From NCBI RefSeq assembly GCF_001194135.2, contig NC_068987.1, positions 42,814,560 to 42,846,838 of the forward strand: DNA of 32,279 bases, in the 5' to 3' direction. The position numbers and the translations under genes were made by a program. Each line of letters starts with the position of its first letter. Within the stretch, counting starts at the first letter, position 1. Origin of the DNA: Octopus bimaculoides. Lineage: Eukaryota. Of the stretch, positions 1-30,630 are shown one piece after another. The notes beneath the pieces were generated by a model. That model worked only from the letters and a program-made list of their open reading frames with translations, had not been told where the DNA came from and did no database searches.

Positions 1-520
1 CTCCTGCTAAAAGGGATTACTCTGCTATGTATAATCAGGGCAGCGCAAAAAGTTGTTTTGCACAAGCATTTCTATAGCCAATTGCACGGATGAAATTTAC
101 GTATGCTTAATAATTTTACGCAAAACAGCCTTCAGACTTTCCCTACTAATTTCATCGTCTTTTGAATTATGAACATATTTACATCATAAGGGTTTTTTCG
201 TTGTAAGGCTTTCTTTTTTAGTTGATTTTCAGCTAGCAAGACTTATCGTAGATGGCATAATAAGTCACACCCGGACAAGGTCGGGTTATACTGCTAGTAT
301 CTTCTATAGTTACTCCTTCGTCTAGTTCTTTCTTAAATTCTGTTATTGAGTTTGCAGCATAATCTGGTGAGAACATCTTTTCAGCATTTTTTGATGAGTT
401 ACTATTCATTAATTGTAGCATTGTTGCTGTAATAGTAATTGTTGTTGTTGTTCTTTCAGTTGTTGTTGTTGCTAGGATTGATTTGTTTGACTAAAATTCT
501 CCAAAGTAGTTCCCCAGTGT

Positions 521-2730
521 GTGAGAGAAAATCATGATGTCACTGGAGAGAAATGTGTCCACATGGATGATGGTTCACTTGCATTTAATGTTTCTGCAAA
601 GCAAGAGGCTTAGAAACACCATTATGAAAGGCTGCTAAATGTAGAGAATGAATGGGAGAAGGAGAGCTTGCCAAATGTTGACCCAACTGAGGGACCAGCT
701 ATCCGAATTGATAGTGGCTTAGTAAATAAAGCAGTTAAGGACATGAAGACAAGGAAAGCACAGGCCCATCAGGAATCACTGCAGAGATGCTTAAAATATC
801 TGGCAGTGTAGGTTATGGTTTAGTCACCCGTATTGTTAACCAAGTGGTACACGAAGGAGTCATACCCAATGGCTGGTGTAGCAGTACCATAGTCAACTGC
901 TACAAAGGTAAAGGTGATGTGTTAGATAGAAATAATTACAGAGCTATCAAATTGTTTGATCAGGTGATGAAAGTCATGGAGAGGGTCATAGCCCAACAAA
1001 TTAGGAAGTGAGTTAGTGTAGATGAGATGCAGTTTGGTTTTGTGCCAGGAAGAAGCACAATTGATGCTATATTTCTGGTAAGGCAGCTGCAGGAGAAATA
1101 CATAGTCAAAGATAAACCTCTGTACCTGGCTTTTGTTGACACGGAGAAAGCCTTTGACAGGGTCCCCCGATCCCTTATCTGGTGGGCAGTGTGGAAACTA
1201 GGGATAGACAAGTGATTGGTGAGAGCTGTAGAGGGATGTTGTCAGTGAGGTGAGTATAGTGAAGAATTCACAGTACAAATAGGGGTTCACCAAGGATCAG
1301 TCCTCAGCCTCCTCTTGTTCATCATAGTCCTCCAGGCAATAACAGAGGAATTTAAGACAGGCTGCCCCTGGGAGCTCCTCTATGCTAATGACCTTGTTCT
1401 TATAGCTGAATCACTACCAGAGCTAGAAGAAGTTTCAAATGTGGAAGCAAGGTTTAGAATTAAAGGGCCTTAGAGTTAACCTAGCAAAAACCAAAGTCTT
1501 AGTAAGTAGGAAAGCAGACAAATCACAACCCCACTCAGGTAGATGGCCCTGCTTGATCTATAGGAAAGGCATAGGTAGAAATTCCATAAGATGCATCTGG
1601 TGTAAACTATAGAGTATAAAAAGTGCAGTAATATCAGAGGAAGGTTAACAGGAAAAATAGTTTTTATGTGTGGAAGGTGCATCGGTATGATTAACACTAA
1701 AAATGTACAGAAAATAGACTCCATCAAATGCCAGAGGGAAAAACTAAAAGTAGTTGATAGCTTCTGTTACCTGGGTGATCAAGTGAGTAGCGGGGATTGG
1801 ATGCTCTGGAAGCATAGCTGCTAGAATAAGAATAAGTTGAGAAAAGTTCAAAGAGCTTCTACTTCTGTTGGTAACGAAGAGCCTCTCCCTCAGAGTGAAA
1901 GGCAGATTGTATGATGCCTGTGTGCAAATAGCCATGCTAAACAGCAGTGAAACATGGCCTGTGACTGCTGTGGACATGCGTAGGCTTCAAAAAAACGAAG
2001 CTAGTGTGCTTTGCTGGATGTGCAATGTCAGTGTGCATGCATGATAGAGTGTAAACATCTTGAGAGAAAAGTTGGGCATAAAAGGCATAAGATGTGGTGT
2101 GCAAGAGAGATGACTGCATTGGTATGGTCAGGTGATGCATATGAATGTGGACAGCTGTAAGAAGCAGTACCAGTGGAAGGAAGCTGTGGAAGAGGGAGAC
2201 CCAGGAAGACATGGGATGAGGTAGTGAATCATGATCTTCAAACACTGGGCCTCATGGAGGCAATGACTAGCGCCCAAGACATTTGGCGACATGTTGTACT
2301 TGTAAAAATCCATCAAGCCAAGTGAAATCATAGTTGTGGCCATTGTTGGTGTCAGGTAACTAGCACTCCTGCTGGTGGCATGTAAAAAGCACCTTTTGAG
2401 TATTGGGACTCATGGAGGCAATGATAAATGATTGAGACCTTTGACAATATGCTGTACTTGAGAAGGAAGATCCATTAAACTGAGTGAAATCATAGTTGTG
2501 GCAGATACTGGTGTCACACAACTGACACTCATGCCGGTGGCATGTAAAAGCACCCATTACACTTGGAGTGCAATGGGTGTTAAAAAGGGCATCCAACTGT
2601 AGAAACCATGCCAGATCAGACCAGAATCTGGTTTGGCCCCTCAGCCTATTAGCCCTGGTCAAATCATCCAATCCATGCCAGCATGGACAGCGAACATTAA
2701 ATTATGATGATGATGATGATGATGATGTAT
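521..2730 (+). mobile_element. Decayed, 5'-truncated RTE-clade LINE: reverse transcriptase, C-terminal region and 3' UTR ending in a (GAT)n tail
   Basis: Broken ORF2 reads ENHDVTGEKCV...HYERLLNVENEW...MLKISG...NCYKGKGDVLDRNNYRAIKL...MQFGFVPGRSTIDAIFLVRQLQEKY...AFVDTEKAFDRVPR...GVHQGSVLS...LLYANDL (YADD mutated). Several in-frame stops and deletions; TGA(n) tail near 2703-2727. Confidence 0.93.
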
Positions 2731-2757
2731 GTATGTATGTGTGTGTGTGTGTGTGTG

Positions 2758-3110
2758 TATCATCATTTAATGTCCATTGTCCATGCTGGCATGGGTTAGA
2801 TGGTTTGACTGAACTGGCACGCTGGAAGGCTGCTCCAGGCTCCAGCCTGATTTGGCATGGTTTTCTATGGCTGGATGCCCTTACTAATTCCAACCACTCT
2901 GAGAGTGTAATAGGTGCTCTTATGTGCCACCAGCATGGGTGCCATTTGCGTGACACTGGTATCTGCCATAACTATGATTTTGCTTGGCTTGATGGGTCTT
3001 CTTCTCAAGCATGAAATAATGCCAAAGATCTTGGTCATTGCTTCTGTGAAGCCCAACACTCTGAAGGAGCTTGGCCACTTTGCCTCCATGAAGCCCAACA
3101 CTCGAAAGGC
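2758..3110 (-). mobile_element. RTE 3'-end fragment in reverse orientation, tail-to-tail with the preceding copy
   Basis: Reverse complement of about 2395-2725 (e.g. tgtccatgctggcatgg, gacactggtatctgccataactatgatt); begins with a (CAT)n reverse tail. Confidence 0.85.
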
Positions 3111-5456
3111 GTTTGTTTTATGTTGTACTGTAAATGTGGGAGGTGTATGAGGTGGTATTGTCTCACTGTCTGTGTATGGTTGCTTAAGCCTGTCTATTGA
3201 GACAGTTACCTTTTTACCATTAATGTCTTTGGTATATAGTTTGTGTGCGACAGGATGCGATAGGGTCCTGTGTATGGAGGTGTGAGAGGGGTTTTCACAG
3301 CGTCATTTTGTAGAAACACATGGGTCCAAGAATCAATGTCTTTTAAAACTGATGCTTTAGTGGTTTGGTGTTGTGTTGACATGGATGGCATTTCTTGCAT
3401 GTATTTGCGAAGTTTGTGTATGTACATAGTGGGGTCTTGTGTGGACAGATCCACTGGGGCCAACATCTGGCCTGGCAACGAAAGAGGTATGCCATAAACA
3501 AGTTCTGCAGGGGAATAACTGAGATCCTTCTTTATCGAAGCTCAACAGCCAAGAAGGACTATTGGAAGATATTCACTCCAACGCTGCCGATTTGGGTAAG
3601 CATGCAAAGCAGCTTTCATTTGACGGTAGAATCGTTCCACCATACTGTTGGATTGTGCATGGTAACTGGTGGTTCAAATCTGATGTGCACCTATGGTCTT
3701 CGTGAGCTCGTGGAAGAGTTGTGATTCAAACTGTTTTCCATGGTTGGTAGTGATGGTGCTAGGGACTCCGTACTGTGATATCCATCCTGTGAGAAAAGCT
3801 TTGGCAACAGATTCTGCTGTGATATCTACTAAAGGAATAGCTTCTGGCCAACGTGTGAAATGATCAATGCAGGTGAGCAGGTAGGTACATCCCTGGCTGA
3901 CTGGCCAAGGTCTGACAGGGTTGATGTGTACATGGTTGAAATGCACATCTGTGCCAAGGGGTGCGCGGATGTGCCTATGCACCTTTGACTTCTGACAGGT
4001 GCTGGAAATGTTTGACTGCTAAATACATTGCTAACAGCCCCGCCCGAAAGTGTTGTAGCAAGTTTCAGCTGGTTTAAGCTGCTGAGAGAAAAAGGCAAGA
4101 GGCTGGAATTGTTGCTGGTGAAATTGTTGTAACACCGTGTCCATGGCAGTGTTGGATGCATCCATTACAAGGGATAGTTGAGTATCTGTGACAGGGTGGG
4201 CAAGAAGCGATGCCTGAGCGAGTTGCTGCTTTGCTGTGTTGAAGGAGTCGAGTTGGCTGGAGTCCAACGCTATCAGCTCATTCCTCTTTTTCCTATTCCA
4301 AAGGAGCATGTTTAGTGGATATAGGATTTCAGCTGAATGAGGAACAAAGTGCTGATAGATGTTAAATAGTCCCAAGAAATGTCGGAGCTGATGTAACGAG
4401 GTGGGTGGAGGTAAATCCTGCAATGCCTTCACCTTGTCAGGTAGTGGCGATATGCCTTTGGGGCTGATGACATGACCTAGGCTGGTCAAAGAAGATGCGC
4501 CAAAAACACATTTGGTAGGGTTGATCCACACTTGGTAAGTCTTGAACTGCTCGAACAGACGACATAAATGATAGAGATGTTCCTTGGGTGAGGCACTAGC
4601 TGTCAAGATCTCAGTGATGTATGCATAGACGAAGTCTAAGTCTCAGACAACTTCATCTATGAACCTTTAAAATGTGCTGGCTGAATTTTGTAAGCCAAAT
4701 GGCACAGTTAGGAATTTGAAGGCGCTAAAAGAAGTGGTTATGGCAGTCTTTGGAATATCTTTTGGATTCACAGGAATCTGATGATATGCCTTAACCAAGC
4801 CCAGTCTGGTGAATACTCTGCAGTTGTGGGGAGATGACGCAAAATCCTGAATGTGGGGTATTGGGTACTTGTCTGGCAGTTTAATCTCCTGTAGTCACCA
4901 GTGGGCCGCCAGTCCCCGGAATGCTTTGGAACCATGTGCAAGGACAATGCCCAGGGGCTATTAGAGGGACAGATGATGCCTAACTGGAGCATGTGGTTAA
5001 ATTCCACCTTGGCCATCTTTAGCTTCTCCAAGGAGAGGTGGTGAGGGCGAGAAAAAACCGGAGCACCTTTAGTTTCGATGAAATGGGTGATAGTGTGAGT
5101 TGGAGCAGCAGTAAAAAAATTTAGGTTAGTCAGCTCCGGATATGAGATTAAGAGTACATGGTATGGATTGTCGTGGCAGCAATGAAAAAGACTGTACCTA
5201 AGGCCACTGGGTTAGTGGCCTTTTACCTGGGATAGAAAGTTCTGTGGTTGTATCCCATAAGCACCAAGCGCATGTCCACAAGCAGGTGGAAGTGGTGCAA
5301 ATAGTCTGCACCTAATACTGGGTAAGGGAGATCTGTGACTGTAAAAATTCACATGAAGTCACGTTGCAGATCTAAATCCAACGAAAGAGATATCTGGCCG
5401 AAAGTTGGAATCGGTGAATGGTTTACCGCCTGTAGAGTCACTGGTGAGAAAAAAGT

Positions 5457-5510
5457 ACAGGGTTGGGTACATTTACATGCTGAAACTCCAAACTTGGCAT
5501 GGTACCAGCA
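5457..5510 (-). other. Gag CHCC zinc-knuckle motif (C-x2-H-x9-C-x3-C)
   Basis: Translation CWYHAKFGVSACKCTQPC; this spacing is characteristic of CsRn1-clade Gag (established knowledge). Confidence 0.85.
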
Positions 5511-6634
5511 TATGGATGAATCAGCAGAGGATGAGTGACAGCAAGGTGAGAAGGAGTGATCGAAAGAACGCTGTCTGGGTGAACATGACTTGGAAGTGAG
5601 AAAGAGCTGCACTTCTCTCATTAATTCAACTATCGTCTTTAGGATAGCAGCCAAAGCAAGGTTCTTATCACTGGAAACTGATGCTACTGGTGGGTGTGCA
5701 GAAGCATTCAGTAGTACTAGGGTAGGCTTGGTGGTGTTGCTGGTATACTTTATGATTCTGTTGGTGGTGGAGGCTATTTGCTTGGCGGGAGTCATCTCCA
5801 CCATAGAGGCTAGGATGACCTGGACATTAGAGGGCAACTGGGAAAAAAACAGTTGTTTCAATAAAGCCCAATCAGCAGGTGCATTTTGGGCCAATTCCTT
5901 CATGCGGTGCAGAAGTTGGGAGGATTTATGGTTGCCCAAGTGCTTGTCATTGACGAGGGTTTGAAATTTTCTTTCTTCCGACAAGGATGTGTGTTGAAGA
6001 ATCTCCTGCTTTATGCTCCTATACATGGCATCATGTGGGGAGTTATCAGGTCCCTCACAGTGGCTGTCAGGGATGGCAGTATTGCGCCAAGTAATATGTG
6101 GAGCTGTTGGGATTCGGAGGCAATATTGTTTGCGGCATATTTCGATTTGGTCTGTGCAAACCACACATGCATCACCCGTGAAGCAAAGTAAGGAACTGTT
6201 ATTCATGGTGAAATGTGTAACAAAGATGTCAATTACTAGAGAAAAGTTTGTAAAATGGCATGTGCTGTTAGATGTAACAGATAGCTCAGGCAGATGTGTT
6301 GTGGGGTATTCAAAATTAGCGCACATGTGTAGCTTGAGAAATGGCGTCAAAGTTTGTGAAGAAAGACAAAATGGCGATGAGCCACATGGTGTATCAATTC
6401 ACATGTACAAGAGAAAAAAATAGAACATTTGGCCATTTCTCCCCAATTTTTTTTTTTTTAAGCCCGACTCAGCTACAAGAACAAAAATGAATTATCTTTT
6501 GAGTGTCGACATCCTAGCAACAGATTGTTTGTATATGAAAATGTGTTGGTGTAAGTGCTGTGTATTTGTAAATGACTTTGGTGTGTGTTTCCTTAGTAAC
6601 AAGCATTTTTCTTTGAACAAGGCATCTGACGAAC

Positions 6635-6669
<35 letters not shown>

Positions 6670-6674
6670 ATATT

Positions 6675-6684
6675 GGGGTCACCA
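6675..6684 (-). promoter_or_regulatory. Primer-binding site complementary to the tRNA-Trp 3' end
   Basis: Minus strand TGGTGACCCC (plus ggggtcacca), upstream of gag and 3 nt from the candidate LTR end; 10-nt match only. Confidence 0.65.
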
Positions 6685-6687
6685 TTT

Positions 6688-7245
6688 TATAGTGGCTGTC
6701 ATTGGCTGTTCAAGTGCGTGTTATTAAATGGAAAAACAGTTAGTATGAATCACCATAAGACATTTTTGTGTATAAATATATTGTTTATTCTGTGTTCACC
6801 TTTTGTGGTGGAAGTATGTAGTATGATACAAAAACATGTGTGTATGTTTGTATGTAAACAAAGAAAGTTTTGATTTTTTGATTTTCATTGAAAGAAGTAA
6901 CAAATAATATTTGTGTTACAGTATGTATGCATGTGTGTGATGAGAACAGTCATTTTGAGAATGTGTGTGAGATAAAATATCTTCGTTTACGAACCATATA
7001 TATTGTGTCAAGGTGAATGGACATGTGAGTCACATGTTGGAGATTGCGCATGGAGCTGTAGAGAAGACGTATCTTTGACTGAAGCTTGGCAGGAACTGGG
7101 GACATTTCTGCAGTGGGGCTCAGAACGAGGCTACTGTACCAAAGTGAGGCGAGTGTATCAAAGCGAGGCTAGACGCTTCATCGATATACTCATCTGCTGT
7201 GCAGGTCGACTCACATATTACTATGTAGCTTGTAGCTCTGCTACA
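6688..7245 (-). repeat. Candidate 5' LTR of the Gypsy element (about 558 bp)
   Basis: Minus strand starts TGTAG at 7245 and ends CCACTATA (TG...CA with a C>T change) next to the PBS; contains AATAAA at 6784-6789. No partner LTR in the window, so the boundary is unconfirmed. Confidence 0.5.
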
Positions 7246-7261
7246 TGTGTGTGTGTGTGTG

Positions 7262-7497
7262 TGTATCTCTCTCTCTTTGTGTTTGCATTTGTTCCCCTTT
7301 CTCCACCATTTGACAACCAGTGTTGGTGTATTTATGTCCCTATAACTTATCAGTTTGGTGAAAAAGAGAATGATAGAATAGGTACCAGGTTTAAAAACAA
7401 AAAACAACTACTGGGGTTAATTCATTCAACTAAATTTCTTCAAGGCTGTGCCCTTGCATGGTTGTAGTCTAATGACTAAAATAAGTAAAAGATAAAA
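7262..7497 (+). mobile_element. 3' half of an abundant SINE-like repeat; related copy at about 27050-27260
   Basis: Shared blocks such as gacaaccagtgttggt..tttatgtccct, tagaata.gtaccaggtt, gcatgg...agtctaatgact.aaa.aagt. Confidence 0.7.
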
Positions 7498-7533
<36 letters not shown>

Positions 7534-7965
7534 TCTCTATGTGGCTTGTGTGTTTTCTGTACTCTGGTTATTATTATTTTCTTGTCTACATTTTGTTTGC
7601 AATGTCCTGTGCCCAGATATGCATCTATATATACAGGTAGACGTAGGTATGCACATACCTGTACGTATATATGCATATACTCATTTATTATTTGTTTTAT
7701 ATATATATAACAATTATTATGTAAGCTAACTGATTTGATGGTGTGAGGTTACTGATGAGTTCACGTGACTGAAAGAAGTAGGCTGTAATGTCTAGTGGCA
7801 GCAGGAATTGTATACCCTGCCATTATTTGTGCATTAGGCAGGTCCAGGGTGGCATATTGGGGTTATCAGTGGTCAAAGGCTTGAAATTTGTTAATGACCT
7901 GTCTTATTGTTGCCACCAGAGCTAAGCTCAACTAATTTCATAAAATCTTTGCCAATATTTTCCAG

Positions 7966-8082
7966 CAAGTTCAGATTCACAGTGATTCTGTGATCACCAT
8001 AGCTCCACAGGAAACATCCAAAAGTTCAATGTATTATGTAATGCAGCAACTGAAGAAAGAAATACCTGAAGTGATGATAAAA
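7966..8082 (+). CDS. POLR3A: RNA polymerase III largest subunit, internal exon ([39 protein letters not shown])
   Basis: tttccag acceptor, aaa|gtaagt donor, 117 nt, phase 0/0; resembles RPC1 ...[28 protein letters not shown] as I recall it. The upstream exon lies outside the window. Confidence 0.93.
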
Positions 8083-9418: not shown

Positions 9419-9527
9419 GGAATTCCTTCAGTGACCCGGGCTGTTATTCATCAAGATGAAAAGAAAGCAAATCATTATAAACTCCTAGTTGAAGGTGACA
9501 ATTTGAGAGCTGTCATGGCTACACGAG
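9419..9527 (+). CDS. POLR3A: POLR3A exon ([37 protein letters not shown])
   Basis: tgttgcag acceptor, g|gtaaac donor, 109 nt, phase 0/1; conserved [15 protein letters not shown] motif. Confidence 0.96.
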
Positions 9528-12660: not shown

Positions 12661-13053
12661 AAAAAAGCAAAAATTGTAATGTGTGAAACAAAATAAATCA
12701 GGTATGAAACTGCACAAGTGCTAATTTGGTTACTGTATCTCATCTGCTAAGTGACCACATAGAAACATATTGGTTTGACCGATTTACTTTCTTTTTGGCT
12801 AGATGAAACTAGATCTGTAGTATTAAATGTCATCCTTAGTGAAATATTGGTGTGACTGCTGTGAGACATGAGCCACAGGCCAGTAGTCAAATACGTGAAT
12901 ATAACAAAGACATTCCATCTTCCTAAAGATGTCTTTTTAAATGAAGATCCTGACAATATTAGAAGTGACATTAATGAAGGTAATAATGTTGATGACAATA
13001 TTAAAGTGGGGAATGATAATTCTTGTTTTGTTTTCTCTTATTTTCAAACGTAG

Positions 13054-13226
13054 GTGTCAATGGAAGCTTATCAACTTCCAACAATACATGTGAAGTAGAA
13101 AAGACTTTAGGTATTGAGGCTGCTCGCACTACAATAATTGAAGAGATTGTCTACACCATGGTCAACCATGGCATGAGTATTGATATCCGACATGTGATGC
13201 TTCTTGCTGACCTGATGACTTGCAGA
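13054..13226 (+). CDS. POLR3A: POLR3A exon ([58 protein letters not shown])
   Basis: cgtag acceptor, aga|gtaagt donor, 173 nt, phase 1/0; LGIEAAR and [11 protein letters not shown] are hallmark motifs of RNA polymerase largest subunits. Confidence 0.98.
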
Positions 13227-14384
13227 GTAAGTGGCTTCTCGTTTCTTCAATGGAATGCTTCCTCCTTTTTTTCAATCTTTTTTTAAAAACAATAACTTCA
13301 TTTTTCTATAATGAAACATTTTTCTTATTCACAGTTGATAATTTGATTCTGTTGCGATTCTGGCCCTGTGTAAAAAATTTTAATCTTGCTTCAATCTTGT
13401 CGTTAAGCAAGGTAAATAACTCTGTGTTAATTTGGCTGAGTAACAATAAAAGGTTCTACTTTGAGCAGTCAAGTCTAAAAACGTTTCACACTGCAAAATC
13501 ACCCTACTTTGTGTAACATTAAAAAATGTATCTAAAATAACCAAAGAGAGTGATCTACCCAGTTAAATTTATATCTTCAGTCATTATATTGTGCTTGGGA
13601 GCAAGGTAGATAACTCTCTCTGACTCAGTGTTTGCCTAACAAAAACACGTTCGACTTTTGGTGAACAATGAAGGAAGAATTCCAGCTCTAAAAACGTTGA
13701 TTCCAACAAAATCACCTCTGCTGTATGTAGCTTTGAGAAAATGTGTATGCATGCATAAAGAACAATCATTTAAAGATAGCGATCTTTCCAGCTGATATCA
13801 ACAATAATGAAAATGTTTTTAATTTGAAACAAATTTTTGCTGTATATTTTGTGTATGAGAAATCCAAACATTTCAAATTGCTCTTTTATATTTGAAATGT
13901 TTGTACATCCAGTTTTCCATGATTGTATTGCTGGATAGTTCTCAGACTATTGATGTTTGAACTGTTGGAATGTATATTTTACAACAGTTATCATTTACCT
14001 CCCTTCTTTAAATATGTTAACACTAACTTAAATATCAAAGAATAATGTGTTCTTGGAATATTTCTATTTTCCACCATGACTGCAAATGTATATTTAATTT
14101 GTGATTCTCTTATCAATACTTTTACAAGCATGGGAAAAACTGAAACTTTACTGAGAAGCCCAGAAGCCCTACTAAGACTGAAATTTGTGTAGCTGGCTCC
14201 CTCATTTCCTGAAATAATATTAGTCAATGACTAATATTGACTTTCCTTCACATAATGTTGTCTACTTTGCTTTTTGATGGTCCCTGAATTAAATATGTTA
14301 ACACAAACTCGACTGTTTCAGTCATAACGTTTATGTTTGTCCTTTAATTAGGTTGACCTCCCATTATCTTTATTTTTGCGATAG

Positions 14385-15043: not shown

Positions 15044-15112
15044 GGTGAAGTACTTGGTATCACAAGATTTGGATTAAGCAAGATGAAAGAAAGTGTCCTA
15101 ATGCTTGCTTCT
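15044..15112 (+). CDS. POLR3A: POLR3A exon (GEVLGITRFGLSKMKESVLMLAS)
   Basis: ctaactag acceptor, tct|gtaagt donor, 69 nt, phase 0/0; near-invariant region H sequence. Confidence 0.98.
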
Positions 15113-16435: not shown

Positions 16436-16499
16436 TTTGAAAAAACTGCTGATCATCTATTTGAAGCAGCTTTCCATGGACAAAAAGATGCCATCACAG
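16436..16499 (+). CDS. POLR3A: POLR3A exon (FEKTADHLFEAAFHGQKDAIT-G)
   Basis: ttctag acceptor, g|gttagt donor, 64 nt, phase 0/1; FEKTADHLF is typical of RPC1. Confidence 0.98.
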
Positions 16500-19100: not shown

Positions 19101-19176
19101 NNNNNNNNNNNNNNNNNNNNNNNNNNNNNNNNNNNNNNNNNNNNNNNNNNNNNNNNNNNNNNNNNNNNNNNNNNNN
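19101..19176. other. Assembly gap; other gaps at 21433-22160, 23126-23572 and 30592-30612
   Basis: Runs of N; the poly-X ORFs in the track are artefacts of these gaps. Confidence 1.
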
Positions 19177-20918: not shown

Positions 20919-20988
20919 GAGTCAGTGAATGTATCATTATGGGAATCCCAATGAGTATTGGAACTGGAATATTTAAACTACTTTACAG
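20919..20988 (+). CDS. POLR3A: POLR3A penultimate coding exon ([24 protein letters not shown])
   Basis: cattacag acceptor (phase 1); [16 protein letters not shown] motif; ends at tac ag|atatcctttt, a U12-type donor (phase 2). Confidence 0.96.
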
Positions 20989-21389
20989 ATATCCTTTTGA
21001 TTATTTGAATTACATCAATTGGGCATGTCTTTGATTTCACGGTGTGTTTGTTTGTTTGTGTGTGTGTGTCTGTGTGTAAGACAGGGAGTTGGTAGGTAAT
21101 GCATTATATTTTAGAATGTATTTGAAAGAGTGAAAATCTTGGATATAAAAGAATTAGGATGTATATATATATATATACGCACACACACACACATAGATAT
21201 ATAAATGTGAGTGTGTAGAGAGTGACAGACAAACATATAAATAGAAAGACAGATATACATTTCACACTTTGTACGCAATATTTGTATCCTTCTTTCTTAC
21301 ACATGCCCACTTATGCACACACACACACATATATATGTCTTAATTCTTTTATATCCAAGATTTTCCCACCGTTCCACTTATGCACACAT

Positions 21390-21432
<43 letters not shown>

Positions 21433-24352
21433 NNNNNNNNNNNNNNNNNNNNNNNNNNNNNNNNNNNNNNNNNNNNNNNNNNNNNNNNNNNNNNNNNNNN
21501 NNNNNNNNNNNNNNNNNNNNNNNNNNNNNNNNNNNNNNNNNNNNNNNNNNNNNNNNNNNNNNNNNNNNNNNNNNNNNNNNNNNNNNNNNNNNNNNNNNNN
21601 NNNNNNNNNNNNNNNNNNNNNNNNNNNNNNNNNNNNNNNNNNNNNNNNNNNNNNNNNNNNNNNNNNNNNNNNNNNNNNNNNNNNNNNNNNNNNNNNNNNN
21701 NNNNNNNNNNNNNNNNNNNNNNNNNNNNNNNNNNNNNNNNNNNNNNNNNNNNNNNNNNNNNNNNNNNNNNNNNNNNNNNNNNNNNNNNNNNNNNNNNNNN
21801 NNNNNNNNNNNNNNNNNNNNNNNNNNNNNNNNNNNNNNNNNNNNNNNNNNNNNNNNNNNNNNNNNNNNNNNNNNNNNNNNNNNNNNNNNNNNNNNNNNNN
21901 NNNNNNNNNNNNNNNNNNNNNNNNNNNNNNNNNNNNNNNNNNNNNNNNNNNNNNNNNNNNNNNNNNNNNNNNNNNNNNNNNNNNNNNNNNNNNNNNNNNN
22001 NNNNNNNNNNNNNNNNNNNNNNNNNNNNNNNNNNNNNNNNNNNNNNNNNNNNNNNNNNNNNNNNNNNNNNNNNNNNNNNNNNNNNNNNNNNNNNNNNNNN
22101 NNNNNNNNNNNNNNNNNNNNNNNNNNNNNNNNNNNNNNNNNNNNNNNNNNNNNNNNNNNNTAAAACGAAGCTATGGCTTAATCAGCCAAAGGAGTAAATG
22201 TAAACAACTGAATACTTGTCAGTGATTGGTTGAAATTATCGAAATAAGACAATTTTTTACATGAAATAAATTCGAATACAAAAATATTTTTCTGTTCTAT
22301 AACACAAAATAGATAAGTATATGAAGTTTGAAAGTCTTTCGGTACCAAAAACACTACGTAAAACATTAATGAAAAATGTGGCCCCCATTTTAAAAAAGAT
22401 CCAATTTATTTAATAAAATCACCATTGAGTTCAACCACAGCTCCAGACAACTTTGAAATCTGTCTGTCTGTCACCCACCAATGGGAAAAACAACACCATA
22501 ATGCAATTCACTCTTCCAGAAATTTGAAAATGACATGCGTACTGCTTGACACTCACGCTGGGAGCTCCAGTATGAATATTTCAGCATGTTTGGGTGTCAA
22601 TCTGAGGACAGTGTAATCTAAGAACATGTACCAAGAGTGATAAAAGCCAAACATCCAGTCAACACCCTATGTCTGGCAACAGGACTCTGCACCATACCAC
22701 ACAAGCAGGAGAACCCAGTCATGGCTGTCAGACAATTTCTGCGACCACATCAGCCCTAACATCTGGCCAACTAATTTCCCAGACTGCAGCCCCCATGATT
22801 ATTGTTTGGCACAGTTGAACAAGAGTCCAACAAAACTTCTTGTAACACCAAAGATGAACTGAAGGCAAGGATTATGGCAGCATTCACCAACTTAAACAAG
22901 GAGACCGTCCAGAAGAGTTGCAGGAGATTCTGAAGTTATCTGGAGGCCGTAGTTGAAGCCAATGGCCATTTTATTGAATGAATTCATTCTTTAGTATTTC
23001 AAGATATTTTTATGTAATTTTTGTAAATATATCTCTTAAAATGAGATGTCAGTGTTATTTTCATTTTTGTGCAATTTAGATGACAGTTTATTCACCACAC
23101 CCTGTATATATATATATATATATATNNNNNNNNNNNNNNNNNNNNNNNNNNNNNNNNNNNNNNNNNNNNNNNNNNNNNNNNNNNNNNNNNNNNNNNNNNN
23201 NNNNNNNNNNNNNNNNNNNNNNNNNNNNNNNNNNNNNNNNNNNNNNNNNNNNNNNNNNNNNNNNNNNNNNNNNNNNNNNNNNNNNNNNNNNNNNNNNNNN
23301 NNNNNNNNNNNNNNNNNNNNNNNNNNNNNNNNNNNNNNNNNNNNNNNNNNNNNNNNNNNNNNNNNNNNNNNNNNNNNNNNNNNNNNNNNNNNNNNNNNNN
23401 NNNNNNNNNNNNNNNNNNNNNNNNNNNNNNNNNNNNNNNNNNNNNNNNNNNNNNNNNNNNNNNNNNNNNNNNNNNNNNNNNNNNNNNNNNNNNNNNNNNN
23501 NNNNNNNNNNNNNNNNNNNNNNNNNNNNNNNNNNNNNNNNNNNNNNNNNNNNNNNNNNNNNNNNNNNNNNNNGGTCAAAATACAATAATAATAATAATAA
23601 TAATAAAATGAATGTATATATATCAACTATCAATAAATAACAAATGAATTTACTTAAAAATACTTATTTTACCAATAAATAAAAGAAAAACATTTAACAA
23701 TATTACTGAAAATAAATGCAATACTTATCTTATCAAAGAGAACTCTGACTTATCCATTATAATAGTGTGCTGTCACTACTAACAGCTAGAAGCTGTTAGC
23801 TAAATCTGATAATCATTTTCAGCAAAAATAAGTGACTTTGCTATGGGTACATCACAGAATCAGTGACTCTATTCAAACTTACCTCTTTGGCAATTAGTCC
23901 TGTGTTTTGTTCAGTCAATTCATTTGTGAATTCATTCACCATGTTAGGCGACCTCTATAAAATCTCAACCCTGCTTCACCAATCTCTTTGCAACTGTAAA
24001 TGTTACCACCACCCTACAACATACAATCACTGAACTATAAACCATAACAACATTGCAAACAGCGCTGCACATTGCGAGCCACTTCATCAGTAAAGCAAGT
24101 ACTTTGACAAACTGAAGTAAAGAACTGTAGTAACATTGGAAACACATACCTGCACTAAACCCTGTCTAATGACACTGCAAGCATAACACCAACCACACTT
24201 CACCCATTAACTAAATTTCCCTCTAACGATACTGCAGATAAGATACCAACCGTACTCCACTCTTTAATTAAATCCCTCTAATTACATTACAGGCACTCAG
24301 CATAACAAAATGCTGTTTCTAAAAAGTTGTTTTACTCCTTAACTGATTCCAC
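20989..24352 (+). other. POLR3A: U12-type (minor spliceosome) AT-AC intron, last intron of POLR3A
   Basis: 5' splice site ATATCCTTTT (20989-20998); branch site TCCTTAAC (24336-24343) about 10 nt before the terminal AC (24351-24352); no polypyrimidine tract; splicing restores an RPC1-like C-terminus in frame. Confidence 0.93.
22440..23104 (+). mobile_element. Internally deleted maT/mori (DD37D, Bmmar1-like) Tc1/mariner element
   Basis: YVWQQD(22683)SAPYHTSRRTQSWLSDNFCDHISPNIWPTNFPDCSPHD(22797)Y has exactly 37 residues between the last two Asp; ends LEAVVEANGHFIE* (22981); right terminus ...caccacaccctg followed by TA. Left TIR not visible. Confidence 0.85.
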
Positions 24353-24434
24353 AGCCAGCCATCCACCTACCCCTATCAACCGAGCCCTTGTGTTTGATCT
24401 GGAAGAACTACACACCCCAGAGTCACAATTATGA
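24353..24434 (+). CDS. POLR3A: POLR3A terminal coding exon (R-ASHPPTPINRALVFDLEELHTPESQL*)
   Basis: In frame only when joined through the AT-AC intron; aligns without gaps to the human C-terminus as I recall it ([23 protein letters not shown]); TGA at 24432-24434. Confidence 0.9.
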
Positions 24435-24470: not shown

Positions 24471-24476
24471 AATAAA
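24471..24476 (+). terminator. Polyadenylation signal of POLR3A
   Basis: AATAAA 36 nt after the stop, an A-run at 24491 as plausible cleavage point, and a U-rich tract at about 24514-24540. Confidence 0.7.
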
Positions 24477-24924: not shown

Positions 24925-25866
24925 TAGGCACAGGTGTGGCTGTCTGGTAAGAAGTTTGCTTCCCAGCAATATGGTTTTGGGTTCAGTCCCAAAACCATAT
25001 TGGGCAAATGTTTTCTACTGTAGCCCCAGACTGACTGATGCTATGTGAGTGGATTTGGTAAACAGAAACTCTATCTCTTACTCTCTCTCAGCTGTGTGAA
25101 AAAGTGTCACACCCTAGCAGTTGAGGGAACCTGTGGAAGAGGTAGACTCAGGAAGATCTGGGATGAGGTGGTGAAGCATGACCTTCGAACATTGGGCCTT
25201 ACTGAGGCAATGACTAGTGACCAAGACCTTTGGAGATATGCTGTGCTTGAGAAGATGCAACAAGCCAAGTGAGACCATAGCCCGTGGCCTATGCCAGTGG
25301 GTGTAACCAGCCCACTTATGAGTACCCCTCATTCATTGGACAATAAACTTTGCTTGCGAAGACCTAGTGGGGCAAGTGAAATCAAATCAAAATCGCTGAC
25401 GTGGCCTGATTGGCACTCATGTCAGTGGAACGTTAAAAGCACATCCGAGCGTGATCATTGGCAGGGACATAGATTGGCTCCTGTGCCAGTGGCACATAAA
25501 AAGCACCATTCAAACATGATCGTTGCCAGCTTCGCCTTACTGGCACATGTGCTGGTAGCACGTGAGAAACAACATTTGAGATTGGTCGTTGCTAGTGCTG
25601 CTGGGCTGGCACCCGTGCAGGAAACATGTAAAAAACACCTTTTGACCATGGTCATTGCCAGAACCACCTGACTGGCCCTTGTGCTGGTGGCATGTAAAAG
25701 CATCCACTGCACTCTTGGAGTGGTTAGTTTTAGGAAGGGCATCCAGCTGTAGAAACTTTGCCAGCTCAGATTGAGCCTGATGCAGCCTTCTGACTCATCA
25801 GTCCTCAGTCAAACCGTCCAACCCATGCCAGCATGGAAAGTGGACGTTAAACAACAATGATGATGA
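24925..25866 (+). mobile_element. SINE head (about 24925-25075) abutting an RTE 3' end (C-terminal ORF, 3' UTR with internal repeats, tail)
   Basis: Head ggcacaggtgtggctgtctggtaagaag...gggttcagtccc; then VEGTCGRGRLRKIWDEVVKHDLRTLGLTEAMTSDQDLWRYAVLEK*, homologous to 2170-2324. Confidence 0.85.
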
Positions 25867-25874
25867 GGATACCA

Positions 25875-26100
25875 TCATCATCATTTGGTGTCTGCTTTTC
25901 ATGCTGGCATAGGCTACAGTTTGATTGGAATTGGTTAGCTGGTGAGCAGTACTATGTGCTAGTCTGATTTTGACTTGGTTTCTATGACTGGATGCCTTTC
26001 CTAATGCCAACCATTCCAAGAGTGTAGTGGGTGCCTTTAATGTGTTGCCAGCACAGGTGTTTCTACATGTCACTGGCACGGGTACTTATACATGTCACTG
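25875..26100 (-). mobile_element. RTE-type tail in reverse orientation, directly after the plus-strand tail
   Basis: Reverse complement of about 25680-25866 (catgctggcat, ctggatgcc.ttcctaa, ccaagagtg.agtgg.tgc). Confidence 0.8.
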
Positions 26101-26115
26101 GCATGTATTAATATA

Positions 26116-27012
26116 TGAAGTCTGATCAATAAGTATCCGGACTGTTGCCATAGTAACAAAACTAAAGCATGCAGAGTGAAGCTGCATGGTACAGATTGAT
26201 CTTGAACTCTACTGTGCATGCACACTAAGTTTTAACATTCTAGCTCACTTCTGCTGTTTATAGTAGTGCTTGGAAGGAAGGTGTGTAGAGTGTGATCATT
26301 GCATTGGCGATGACAGAGAAAGTTGTCATGGTGATACCTGCTCAGAGGCCTATGCAAGGTTGCAGAAAGTGTATGGAGAGCAGTGTATGAGCCGCACACA
26401 AGTGTATGAATGGTTCAGACATTTCCAAGATGGCCAAAAAAATGTTGATATTGACAAACGTTCTGAGAGACCTGCAACCAGCAGAACTGAAAAAACATTG
26501 CAGATGTGTGTGTGCAGCTATGAGGGAAAATCATCGAATTACCATCTGTGAGTTATTAGAGGATGAGCAAGATTAGTTACAGTTGAGTTCAGTCCTTTAT
26601 CACTGAAGATTTGGGTATGAGACATATGTCTGCCAAGTTTGTGCCAAAACTGCTTTCAGCTGACCAAAAGGATATGGGGTTTTCAGTCACACAAGGTCTC
26701 CTTGATTGTGTCGAGAATGATGAAAACTTTTTGAAAACTTTGCATAGGCCTCTGAGCAGGTATCACCAAGCTTTTGGCAAAATTTGATGCAGATTCTCTG
26801 CTCAACTTTCTCTGTCATGATCAATACAATGATCACACACTACACACGTTCCTTCCAAGCACTGCTGTAAACAGTGGAAGTGAGCTAGAATGGTAAAACT
26901 TAGTGCACATGCACAGCAGAGTTCAAGGTCAATCTGTGCCAAGCAGCTTCACTCTACGTGCTTTAGCTTCGTTACTATGGCAATAGTCCAGATACTTATT
27001 GATCAGACCACG
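26116..27012. mobile_element. Non-autonomous mariner derivative with about 250-276-bp inverted arms
   Basis: Termini ta|tgaagtctgatcaataagtatc ... gatacttattgatcagaccacg; internal transposase N-half (GDTCSEAYARLQKVYGEQCMSRTQVYEWF...DLGMRHMSAKFVPKLLSADQK...ENDENFLK). Confidence 0.92.
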
Positions 27013-30477: not shown

Positions 30478-30630
30478 TACTAGCGTATCTAAAGTGTCTG
30501 CCACCCTAAGCGGCCCTTCCGTTTGCCGTCCCCGGACCCCACAAAGAAAAAAAACAACACATTGCCTACAGCAGATCCAAAAGCGCCAGGGNNNNNNNNN
30601 NNNNNNNNNNNNCCCCCCGATACGCTAGTG
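30478..30630. mobile_element. Small GC-rich MITE-like element, superfamily unassigned
   Basis: Inverted ends actagcgtatc (30479-30489) and gatacgctagt (30619-30629), flanked on both sides by CATT; contains an N gap. Confidence 0.5.

What the first reader, a model, noticed from the sequence alone, without database searches (positions are those of the whole stretch)
20989..24434. Hypothesis: Pol III - U6atac - POLR3A feedback loop
Established: U6atac, the catalytic snRNA of the minor spliceosome, is a Pol III transcript and was reported in human cells to be unstable and limiting for minor-intron splicing. Seen here: the complete catalytic subunit of Pol III needs removal of a minor intron. Inference: falling Pol III output would lower U6atac, increase retention of this intron and further reduce full-length POLR3A, a positive-feedback switch coupling tRNA/5S synthesis to minor splicing.
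Basis: inference. Interest (0 to 1): 0.7.

Follow-up and report, generated by a model that had tools for sequence, protein, structure and literature searches.

The report
Ancient minor-spliceosome intron in octopus POLR3A
The last intron of the octopus gene for the catalytic subunit of RNA polymerase III is a textbook AT-AC minor-spliceosome intron, conserved from sea anemones to hemichordates but lost in vertebrates; this makes the proposed Pol III - U6atac - POLR3A loop physically possible, but the sequence does not show that it regulates anything.

Summary
The window carries the last seven coding exons of POLR3A/RPC1. Spliced, they give 227 aa, 100% identical to residues 1166-1392 of Octopus sinensis RPC1. 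The last intron (20989-24352) has a perfect U12 donor (ATATCCTTT), a perfect branch site (TCCTTAAC) 10 nt before the acceptor, and an AC end. The five introns upstream are ordinary GT-AG. Both N gaps lie inside the intron, 444 nt and 763 nt from the splice signals. No residue is missing across the junction, so reading frame is not in question; only the intron's length and content are unknown.

An intron at the same codon and phase, with U12 signals, occurs in a bivalve, a hemichordate and a sea anemone. It is absent from a snake, and POLR3A is not among human or mouse minor-intron genes. The three invertebrates also carry a second U12 intron, in the trigger-loop region.

The feedback-switch idea remains untested. 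The wiring exists, and mammals have equivalent wiring through POLR3C, POLR3H, POLR2E and POLR2K. Against it, vertebrates dispense with this intron, and human POLR3B-deficient cells showed more U6atac, not less. Most likely this is an ancient, routinely spliced minor intron: a new member of a known kind.

The parts
7966..8082 (+). POLR3A coding exon A (RPC1 residues about 1166-1204); first POLR3A exon found in the window
   Evidence: tblastn with O. sinensis RPC1 P0121, 100% identity; boundaries ..ccag|CAAGTT and ATAAAA|gtaagt
9419..9527 (+). POLR3A coding exon B
   Evidence: flanked by ..tgcag| and |gtaaac
13054..13226 (+). POLR3A coding exon C
   Evidence: about 97% identical in the exon to a contig of a related species, L002
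15044..15112 (+). POLR3A coding exon D
16436..16499 (+). POLR3A coding exon E
20919..20988 (+). POLR3A coding exon F ([23 protein letters not shown] + AG of the split Arg codon); penultimate coding exon
20989..24352 (+). Last intron of POLR3A: U12-type, AT-AC subtype, phase 2; nominal 3364 nt of which 1175 are N
   Evidence: Boundaries fixed by reading frame and by 100% identity of the spliced product to P0121. Orthologous U12 introns in L004, L005 and L006
20989..20997 (+). U12-type 5' splice site ATATCCTTT (9/9 match to consensus)
   Evidence: only + strand copy in the window; 0.49 expected on both strands
21032..21034 (+). In-frame TGA reached if the intron is retained. The product would end ...[18 protein letters not shown], with the last 26 residues replaced by 14
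21433..22160 (.). Assembly gap 1 (728 N), inside the intron, preceded by (AT)14
23126..23572 (.). Assembly gap 2 (447 N), inside the intron, preceded by (TA)n
24336..24343 (+). U12 branch-point sequence TCCTTAAC (8/8); 10 nt from the second A to the last intron base, with no polypyrimidine tract between
24351..24352 (+). Terminal AC of the intron. The AG two bases further on would shift the frame and end the protein early
24353..24434 (+). Last coding exon G (third base of the Arg codon + ASHPPTPINRALVFDLEELHTPESQL + TGA)
24471..24476 (+). AATAAA polyadenylation signal 37 nt after the stop, fitting the gene's 3' end

Best explanation
The feature is the last intron of the octopus POLR3A (RPC1) gene. 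It is an ancient AT-AC U12-type intron in phase 2, sitting between the conserved GVSECIIMG...FKLL segment and the 26-residue C-terminal tail.

Shown:
- The minor-spliceosome signals.
- The exact splice junction.
- Conservation of position, phase and U12 signals in Cnidaria, Mollusca and Hemichordata.
- Absence in a snake.

Inferred:
- U11/U12 recognise the donor and branch site, and U4atac/U6atac-U5 catalyse removal.
- The intron is spliced routinely and has persisted because these slowly evolving lineages lose minor introns slowly.
- It makes POLR3A mRNA production depend on the minor spliceosome, and therefore on Pol III-made U6atac. That circular dependency is real as wiring but has no demonstrated regulatory role.
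- If the intron is retained, the transcript would encode a protein lacking the conserved tail, or would be held and degraded in the nucleus as reported for other unspliced U12 transcripts.
For: - Identity: E=2.9e-50 to human RPC1; 100% over 227 aa to O. sinensis RPC1.
- Signals: ATATCCTTT ... TCCTTAAC + 10 nt ... AC, while the five upstream introns are GTAAGT-type GT-AG. Both motifs are rare in the window.
- Orthologous introns at the same codon and phase:
  - Potamilus: AA|ATATCCTTT ... ACCTTGAC + 11 ... AC.
  - Ptychodera: AA|ATATCCTTT ... TCCCTAAC + 12 ... AC.
  - Actinostola: AA|ATATCCTTT ... GCCTTAAC + 10 ... AA.
- Gene models from Paramuricea and Actinostola end in the read-through peptide K-YPF(I), the translation of A|TATCCTTT.
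- Losses: Naja naja has one fused last exon. An unidentified invertebrate contig has no intron there, and one ENA contig carries an intronless gene. POLR3A is not in the human/mouse minor-intron lists.
- Molluscs, including O. sinensis, are documented as rich in minor introns.
Against: - No RNA data from octopus were available, so actual splicing, its efficiency and any retention are unobserved.
- Keeping the U12 type at this site, plus a second U12 intron in the same gene, over more than 600 My (my own dating) could reflect selection rather than slow neutral loss.
- Intron content is one-third unread (gaps).
- The Actinostola AT-AA acceptor is inferred from reading frame only.
Confidence: 0.7

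Rival explanations
1. One reading: the intron closes a positive-feedback loop. Less Pol III gives less U6atac, more retention of this intron and less full-length RPC1. The loop would act as a switch coupling tRNA/5S synthesis to minor splicing.
For: - The wiring exists: a consensus U12 intron in the catalytic-subunit gene.
- It is deeply conserved, together with a second U12 intron in the same gene in three phyla.
- Retention would remove a conserved tail.
Against: - Human POLR3B-deficient fibroblasts and edited HEK293 cells had increased U6atac while tRNA precursors, 7SL and BC200 fell.
- A snake has lost the intron, and POLR3A is not a human/mouse minor-intron gene.
- U6atac instability is shown only in human cells.
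- Self-reinforcing loss of an essential enzyme is a risky design, and Pol III complexes probably outlast U6atac by far, so loop gain is likely low (inference).
- A pan-eukaryotic survey finds minor-intron patterns largely explained by neutral processes.
Confidence: 0.1
2. The intron is a one-way throttle rather than a loop. It would be a slow or U6atac-limited splicing step that lets stress or growth signals (for example p38-type stabilisation of U6atac) tune POLR3A output, along with other minor-intron genes of the transcription machinery, without bistability.
For: The Younis model for about 200 human genes. Other polymerase subunit genes are minor-intron genes in mammals: POLR3C, POLR3H, POLR2E, POLR2K, POLR1E. 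Two U12 introns occur in invertebrate POLR3A.
Against: No expression data here. A perfect-consensus donor and branch site suggest efficient rather than weak recognition. A snake manages without the intron.
Confidence: 0.17
3. Artefact: the two sides of the gaps are wrongly joined, or the intron is really removed by the major spliceosome.
For: Two gaps of estimated size lie between the exons. No independent octopus DNA for this intron could be fetched, because the gene range was too long.
Against: - Exon order, orientation and junction match the O. sinensis protein exactly, and a probable transcript contig of a related cephalopod reads across the same junction.
- A poly(A) signal follows the stop.
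- The same exon pair, separated by a U12 intron, occurs in three other phyla.
- The donor has no GT, and the signals are U12 consensus, not the U2-type AT-AC pattern.
Confidence: 0.03

Closest known systems
U12-type (minor-spliceosome) introns of the AT-AC subtype, as catalogued in U12DB, MIDB and the intronIC surveys
   Same: Donor ATATCCTTT, branch site TCCTTAAC about 10 nt from the acceptor, no polypyrimidine tract, AC end. It is a single minor intron among major ones (within the window), with position and type conserved across phyla.
   Different: The host gene POLR3A is not a minor-intron gene in human or mouse. This intron survives in invertebrate lineages only, as far as sampled.
Minor introns in other RNA polymerase subunit genes of mammals: POLR3C, POLR3H, POLR2E, POLR2K, POLR1E (MIDB, PMC6717393)
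   Same: They create the same circular dependency: Pol III subunits need the minor spliceosome, and the minor spliceosome needs Pol III-made U6atac.
   Different: Different genes and positions. Here it is the catalytic subunit itself, and in the relatives checked it is interrupted twice.
[quoted passage not shown] 2013, PMC3728624)
   Same: The proposed mechanism, U6atac level setting the output of a minor-intron gene, is exactly that model. The paper already describes the minor spliceosome as a sensor of Pol II/III activity.
   Different: That work is in human cells and does not close the loop back onto Pol III. Nothing is known for cephalopods.
Autoregulation of minor-spliceosome proteins U11-48K and U11/U12-65K through a U11-bound splicing enhancer (from my own knowledge, not checked here)
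   Same: A feedback loop that runs through the minor spliceosome.
   Different: That loop is negative (homeostatic) and acts through alternative splicing and decay of the spliceosome's own protein genes. It is not positive and does not run through a polymerase.

Membership tests
POLR3A / RPC1 (largest, catalytic subunit of RNA polymerase III) | Sequence orthology to RPC1 rather than to RPB1 or RPA1 | tested here: met
   Best solved-structure hit is human RPC1 at E=2.9e-50, against about 1e-5 for RPB1/RPA190. 100% identity over 227 aa to O. sinensis RPC1, which carries Pfam Rpb1_1 to Rpb1_5.
U12-type intron | 5' splice site /[AG]TATCCTT directly at the exon end | tested here: met
   ATATCCTTT at 20989-20997, immediately after the last in-frame exon base.
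U12-type intron | Branch-point sequence TCCTTAAC-like, about 10-20 nt from the 3' splice site, without a polypyrimidine tract | tested here: met
   TCCTTAAC at 24336-24343, then CTGATTCCAC to the junction: 10 nt.
U12-type intron | Terminal dinucleotides AT-AC (or GT-AG) that give the correct reading frame | tested here: met
   AT...AC gives ...LLYR|ASHPPTPINRALVFD..., matching all orthologues. The nearby AG shifts the frame to an early stop.
U12-type intron | Orthologous introns at the same position also carry U12 signals | tested here: met
   Potamilus L004, Ptychodera L005 and Actinostola L006; read-through signature in Paramuricea.
U12-type intron | Removal depends on U11, U12, U4atac and U6atac snRNPs | not testable with these tools
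   Needs knockdown or in vitro splicing. The minor spliceosome and minor introns are documented for molluscs including O. sinensis.
U6atac-regulated 'molecular switch' minor intron (Younis 2013) | U6atac is unstable and limiting in the organism | not testable with these tools
   Shown only for human cells. No U6atac gene in the window (Rfam).
U6atac-regulated 'molecular switch' minor intron (Younis 2013) | The intron is measurably retained, and mRNA output follows U6atac level | not testable with these tools
   No RNA-seq access. Only the consequence of retention could be computed: a stop after 14 intron codons.
Positive feedback loop Pol III -> U6atac -> POLR3A | Lower Pol III activity lowers U6atac | not testable with these tools
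   The only data found point the other way: U6atac rose in human POLR3B-deficient cells. ActD/DRB treatment lowers it.
Positive feedback loop Pol III -> U6atac -> POLR3A | The loop is maintained wherever Pol III and the minor spliceosome coexist | tested here: not met
   A snake lacks the intron, and POLR3A is not a human/mouse minor-intron gene, although other Pol III subunit genes are.

The most novel reading that the evidence does not exclude
Ancestral animal POLR3A carried two U12-type introns, one in the trigger-loop codon ...VASM|NIT... and one before the C-terminal tail. Together they would form a conserved mutual-dependence circuit between Pol III and the minor spliceosome, acting as a growth/stress switch in non-vertebrate animals. 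Vertebrates would have moved this coupling to other subunit genes (POLR3C, POLR3H, POLR2E, POLR2K).
Probability: 0.1. Interest if true: 0.7.

Novelty: new member of a known kind. Interest (0 to 1): 0.4.

Why it matters
Why minor introns persist is a long-standing question. An intron that ties the catalytic subunit of Pol III to a spliceosome whose catalytic RNA Pol III itself makes is a clean, testable case of circular dependency. Here that intron sits at the same site with U12 signals from cnidarians to hemichordates, and a second U12 intron sits in the same gene. If retention of these introns tracks U6atac, it would link tRNA/5S output to minor splicing in most animal phyla. If it does not, this is one more long-lived minor intron, consistent with neutral persistence. 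It also has a practical use: two deposited gene models (Actinostola, Paramuricea) end in the tell-tale read-through 'K-YPF'.

Tried and rejected
- A first homologue search with the 138-aa exon peptide returned only proteins of 241 aa or fewer. Padding the query with X to about 900 aa brought in full-length RPC1 proteins.
- Genomic look-ups failed for Cherax, Paramuricea, Mizuhopecten and Lingula (not on record). The look-up for O. sinensis itself also failed because the gene range of about 208 kb is too long. The gaps therefore could not be closed against another octopus assembly.
- The last look-up hit an intronless gene on an unidentified ENA contig, which says little.
- Rfam found no RNA gene in the window, so no snRNA gene is present.
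- The other [AG]TATCCTT matches (18493, 21284 on +, 26675 on -) are not at exon ends and fit chance expectation.
- The stretch between the gaps looks to me like a decayed Tc1/mariner transposase tail, but Pfam gave no hit.
- Literature searches for POLR3A with 'minor intron' or 'U12-type', and for U6atac with Pol III subunit genes, found no paper describing this intron or the loop. The held supplements of the two large intron surveys contained no gene lists.
- Use of the AG at 24353-24354 as acceptor was rejected because it shifts the frame to an early stop.
Full report
WHAT IS IN THE WINDOW

The + strand carries the 3' end of a POLR3A/RPC1 gene. A peptide joined from three open stretches hit human RPC1 at E=2.9e-50, far above RPB1 or RPA190. 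tblastn with fragments found by homology search, followed by inspection of the boundaries, gave seven coding exons:
- A 7966-8082
- B 9419-9527
- C 13054-13226
- D 15044-15112
- E 16436-16499
- F 20919-20988
- G 24353-24434, with stop TGA at 24432-24434

The spliced 684 nt encode 227 aa. These are 100% identical to residues 1166-1392 of Octopus sinensis RPC1, P0121. That gene spans about 208 kb in the O. sinensis assembly, so the window holds about one sixth of the coding sequence, not the whole gene. An AATAAA lies 37 nt after the stop. Bases 1-7900 and 25000-27000 hold transposon remains: LINE-type reverse transcriptase, LTR-element RNase H and integrase, and a Mos1-type HTH.

THE INTRON

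The five upstream introns begin GTAAGT, GTAAAC, GTAAGT, GTAAGT and GTTAGT, and all end in AG. The last intron (20989-24352) is different:
- It begins ATATCCTTT.
- It carries TCCTTAAC at 24336-24343, followed by CTGATTCCAC.
- It ends in AC.

These are the full consensus donor and branch site of the minor (U12-dependent) spliceosome. The spacing is the short one typical of U12 introns, and there is no polypyrimidine tract.

Each motif is expected 0.5 and 1.0 times in the whole window on both strands. Having them exactly at the two exon borders is therefore not chance. The other [AG]TATCCTT matches in the window are not at exon borders. Using the AG two bases downstream would shift the frame to an early stop.

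THE GAPS

Both N runs (21433-22160 and 23126-23572) lie inside the intron. Each comes directly after a (TA)n microsatellite. The donor is 444 nt before the first gap, and the branch site is 763 nt after the second.

Across the junction the protein reads ...[10 protein letters not shown]|ASHPPTPINRALVFDLEELHTPESQL. This is collinear with every orthologue examined, with no residue missing. A 4.7-kb Logan contig from a related cephalopod carries an uninterrupted 1392-aa open reading frame and reads straight across the same junction (P0122). I infer from its length that it is a transcript; its source was not looked up.

So no exon is hidden in the gaps, and reading frame is not at stake. What remains unknown is the true length and content of the intron and, strictly, the scaffold join. 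I could not fetch independent octopus DNA for this intron.

RELATIVES

Padding the query to full length brought in full-length RPC1 proteins. Their genes were read where the collection allowed.

| Species (locus) | Upstream exon end and donor | Branch site, spacing, intron end | Next exon begins |
|---|---|---|---|
| Potamilus streckersoni, bivalve (L004) | ...CAT AA / ATATCCTTT | ACCTTGAC + 11 nt, AC | A GTT GAG |
| Ptychodera flava, hemichordate (L005) | ...CAC AA / ATATCCTTT | TCCCTAAC + 12 nt, AC | A TCT GAG |
| Actinostola sp., sea anemone (L006) | ...CAC AA / ATATCCTTT | GCCTTAAC + 10 nt, AA | G CCA ACC |

Notes on these:
- The Actinostola intron is 162 nt. Its acceptor is inferred from reading frame only.
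- The deposited Actinostola model and a partial model from the octocoral Paramuricea both end in the peptide K-YPF(I). That is the translation of A|TATCCTTT.
- Position (the same codon), phase (2) and U12 signals are thus shared by Cnidaria, Mollusca and Hemichordata. The intron therefore predates the cnidarian-bilaterian split.

It is absent elsewhere:
- In the snake Naja naja one exon runs from GVSEC... to the stop.
- An unidentified AT-rich invertebrate contig has no intron there.
- One ENA contig has an intronless gene.
- The supplementary tables of the Minor Intron Database paper list POLR3C, POLR3H, POLR2E, POLR2K and POLR1E as human/mouse minor-intron genes, but not POLR3A.

A SECOND U12 INTRON IN THE SAME GENE

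The same three invertebrates have a second U12-type intron. It splits the Asn codon of the trigger-loop motif FHFAGVASM|NIT:

| Species | Donor | Branch site, spacing, intron end |
|---|---|---|
| Potamilus | GTATCCTTT | TTCCTTAAT + 10 nt, AG |
| Ptychodera | ATATCCTTT | TCTTTAAC + 11 nt, AC |
| Actinostola | GTATCCTTT | TTCTTAAC + about 9 nt, AG |

In octopus this position lies upstream of the window.

HOW IT MOST LIKELY WORKS

Shown: the signals, the junction and the conservation.

Inferred from established knowledge of the minor spliceosome: U11/U12 bind the donor and branch site, and U4atac/U6atac-U5 carry out catalysis.

If the intron is not removed, translation continues for 14 codons to a TGA at 21032. 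The last 26 residues would then be replaced. These include the widely conserved ...[RK]xL[LIV]FD..[FL]H.P tail. Because it is the last intron, exon-junction-dependent decay would not be triggered. However, unspliced U12 transcripts are reported to be held in the nucleus and degraded by the exosome (title and abstract of PMC4066798).

The intron therefore makes POLR3A output depend on the minor spliceosome. If octopus U6atac is a Pol III product, as it is in other animals, that is a genuine circular dependency.

THE FEEDBACK-SWITCH HYPOTHESIS

Its premises are partly in print. U6atac has a half-life under 2 h and is limiting in HeLa cells. [quoted passage not shown] Closing the loop through a Pol III subunit gene was not found in the searchable literature.

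Several points argue against a dedicated switch:
- In human POLR3B-deficient fibroblasts and edited HEK293 cells, pre-tRNAs, 7SL and BC200 fell but U6atac rose. That rise was reversed by restoring POLR3B.
- A snake has lost the intron, and POLR3A is not among human/mouse minor-intron genes.
- The same wiring exists in mammals through four other subunit genes, so it is not special to this intron.
- A survey of more than 3000 genomes argues that minor-intron distribution is largely neutral. It also notes that molluscs are simply rich in minor introns.
- Self-amplifying loss of an essential enzyme seems a poor design, and the loop would be slow if Pol III outlives U6atac. This point is my inference.

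One observation keeps the idea alive. The U12 type is held at two sites of one gene across three phyla. At a genome-wide frequency of about 0.3-0.5%, two minor introns among roughly 30 is unusual (rough estimate, below 1%).

VERDICT

The thing itself is an ancient, conserved AT-AC minor intron in POLR3A, a new member of a known kind. The regulatory loop is possible wiring with no evidence for or against it in this organism, and with indirect evidence against it from vertebrates.

Noticed in passing
L004 77027-78419; L005 32413-33231; L006 36792-37101: A second U12-type intron in POLR3A orthologues splits the Asn codon of the trigger-loop motif FHFAGVASM|NIT. It is GT-AG in the bivalve and the sea anemone and AT-AC in the hemichordate, an example of subtype switching. 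In octopus this site lies upstream of the window.
   Followed up: partly
L006 41068-43026: In the Actinostola assembly the small exon for RPC1 residues about 1146-1167 sits in roughly 24 tandem copies of an 82-bp unit. The exon after the trigger-loop intron is also duplicated (37101 and 37252), and the exon before it seems to lack one base (GCT CGA TGA instead of GCT TCG ATG A). These are probably assembly errors and explain the truncated 1271-aa gene model.
   Followed up: no
protein models P0244 (Actinostola) and P0096 (Paramuricea): Both deposited gene models stop inside the AT-AC intron and end in the read-through peptide K-YPF(I). This peptide is a handy protein-level marker of an unrecognised ATATCCTTT donor in phase 2.
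   Followed up: yes
window 600-6400: The intron upstream of exon A is filled with transposon remains: LINE-type reverse transcriptase on + (about 787-1612), LTR-element RNase H and integrase on - (3674-4606), and a 333-aa ORF on - (5349-6350) with no Pfam match. GC content here is 0.43-0.46, against 0.32-0.38 elsewhere.
   Followed up: partly
window 26270-26548 (+), and 25045-25272 versus 2173-2325: There is a Mos1/mariner-type HTH_48 domain downstream of the gene. Two similar short ORFs (...GRGRxRKxWDEVVxHDLxTLGLxEAMTS...) indicate a repeated element on both sides of the POLR3A exons.
   Followed up: partly
window 22600-22960: Between the two gaps the + strand reads like the C-terminal part of a decayed Tc1/mariner transposase (...WPxNxPDCSPxDY...). 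Pfam gave no match, so this is unconfirmed. A transposon insert flanked by (TA)n runs would explain why the assembly broke here.
   Followed up: partly
L007 1501-5661: An ENA contig of 926 kb carries an intronless 1386-codon POLR3A gene. Its protein resembles the ascidian Phallusia sequence. The organism was not identified.
   Followed up: no
L002 (Logan SRR11869390) versus window 12700-13900: A contig from a related species aligns at 84% mean column identity through the introns around exon C and is nearly identical in the exon. It shows long conserved intronic stretches next to the exon.
   Followed up: no
window 19101-19176 and 30592-30612: Two further short assembly gaps lie outside the finding. 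The first is in the intron between exons E and F.
   Followed up: no
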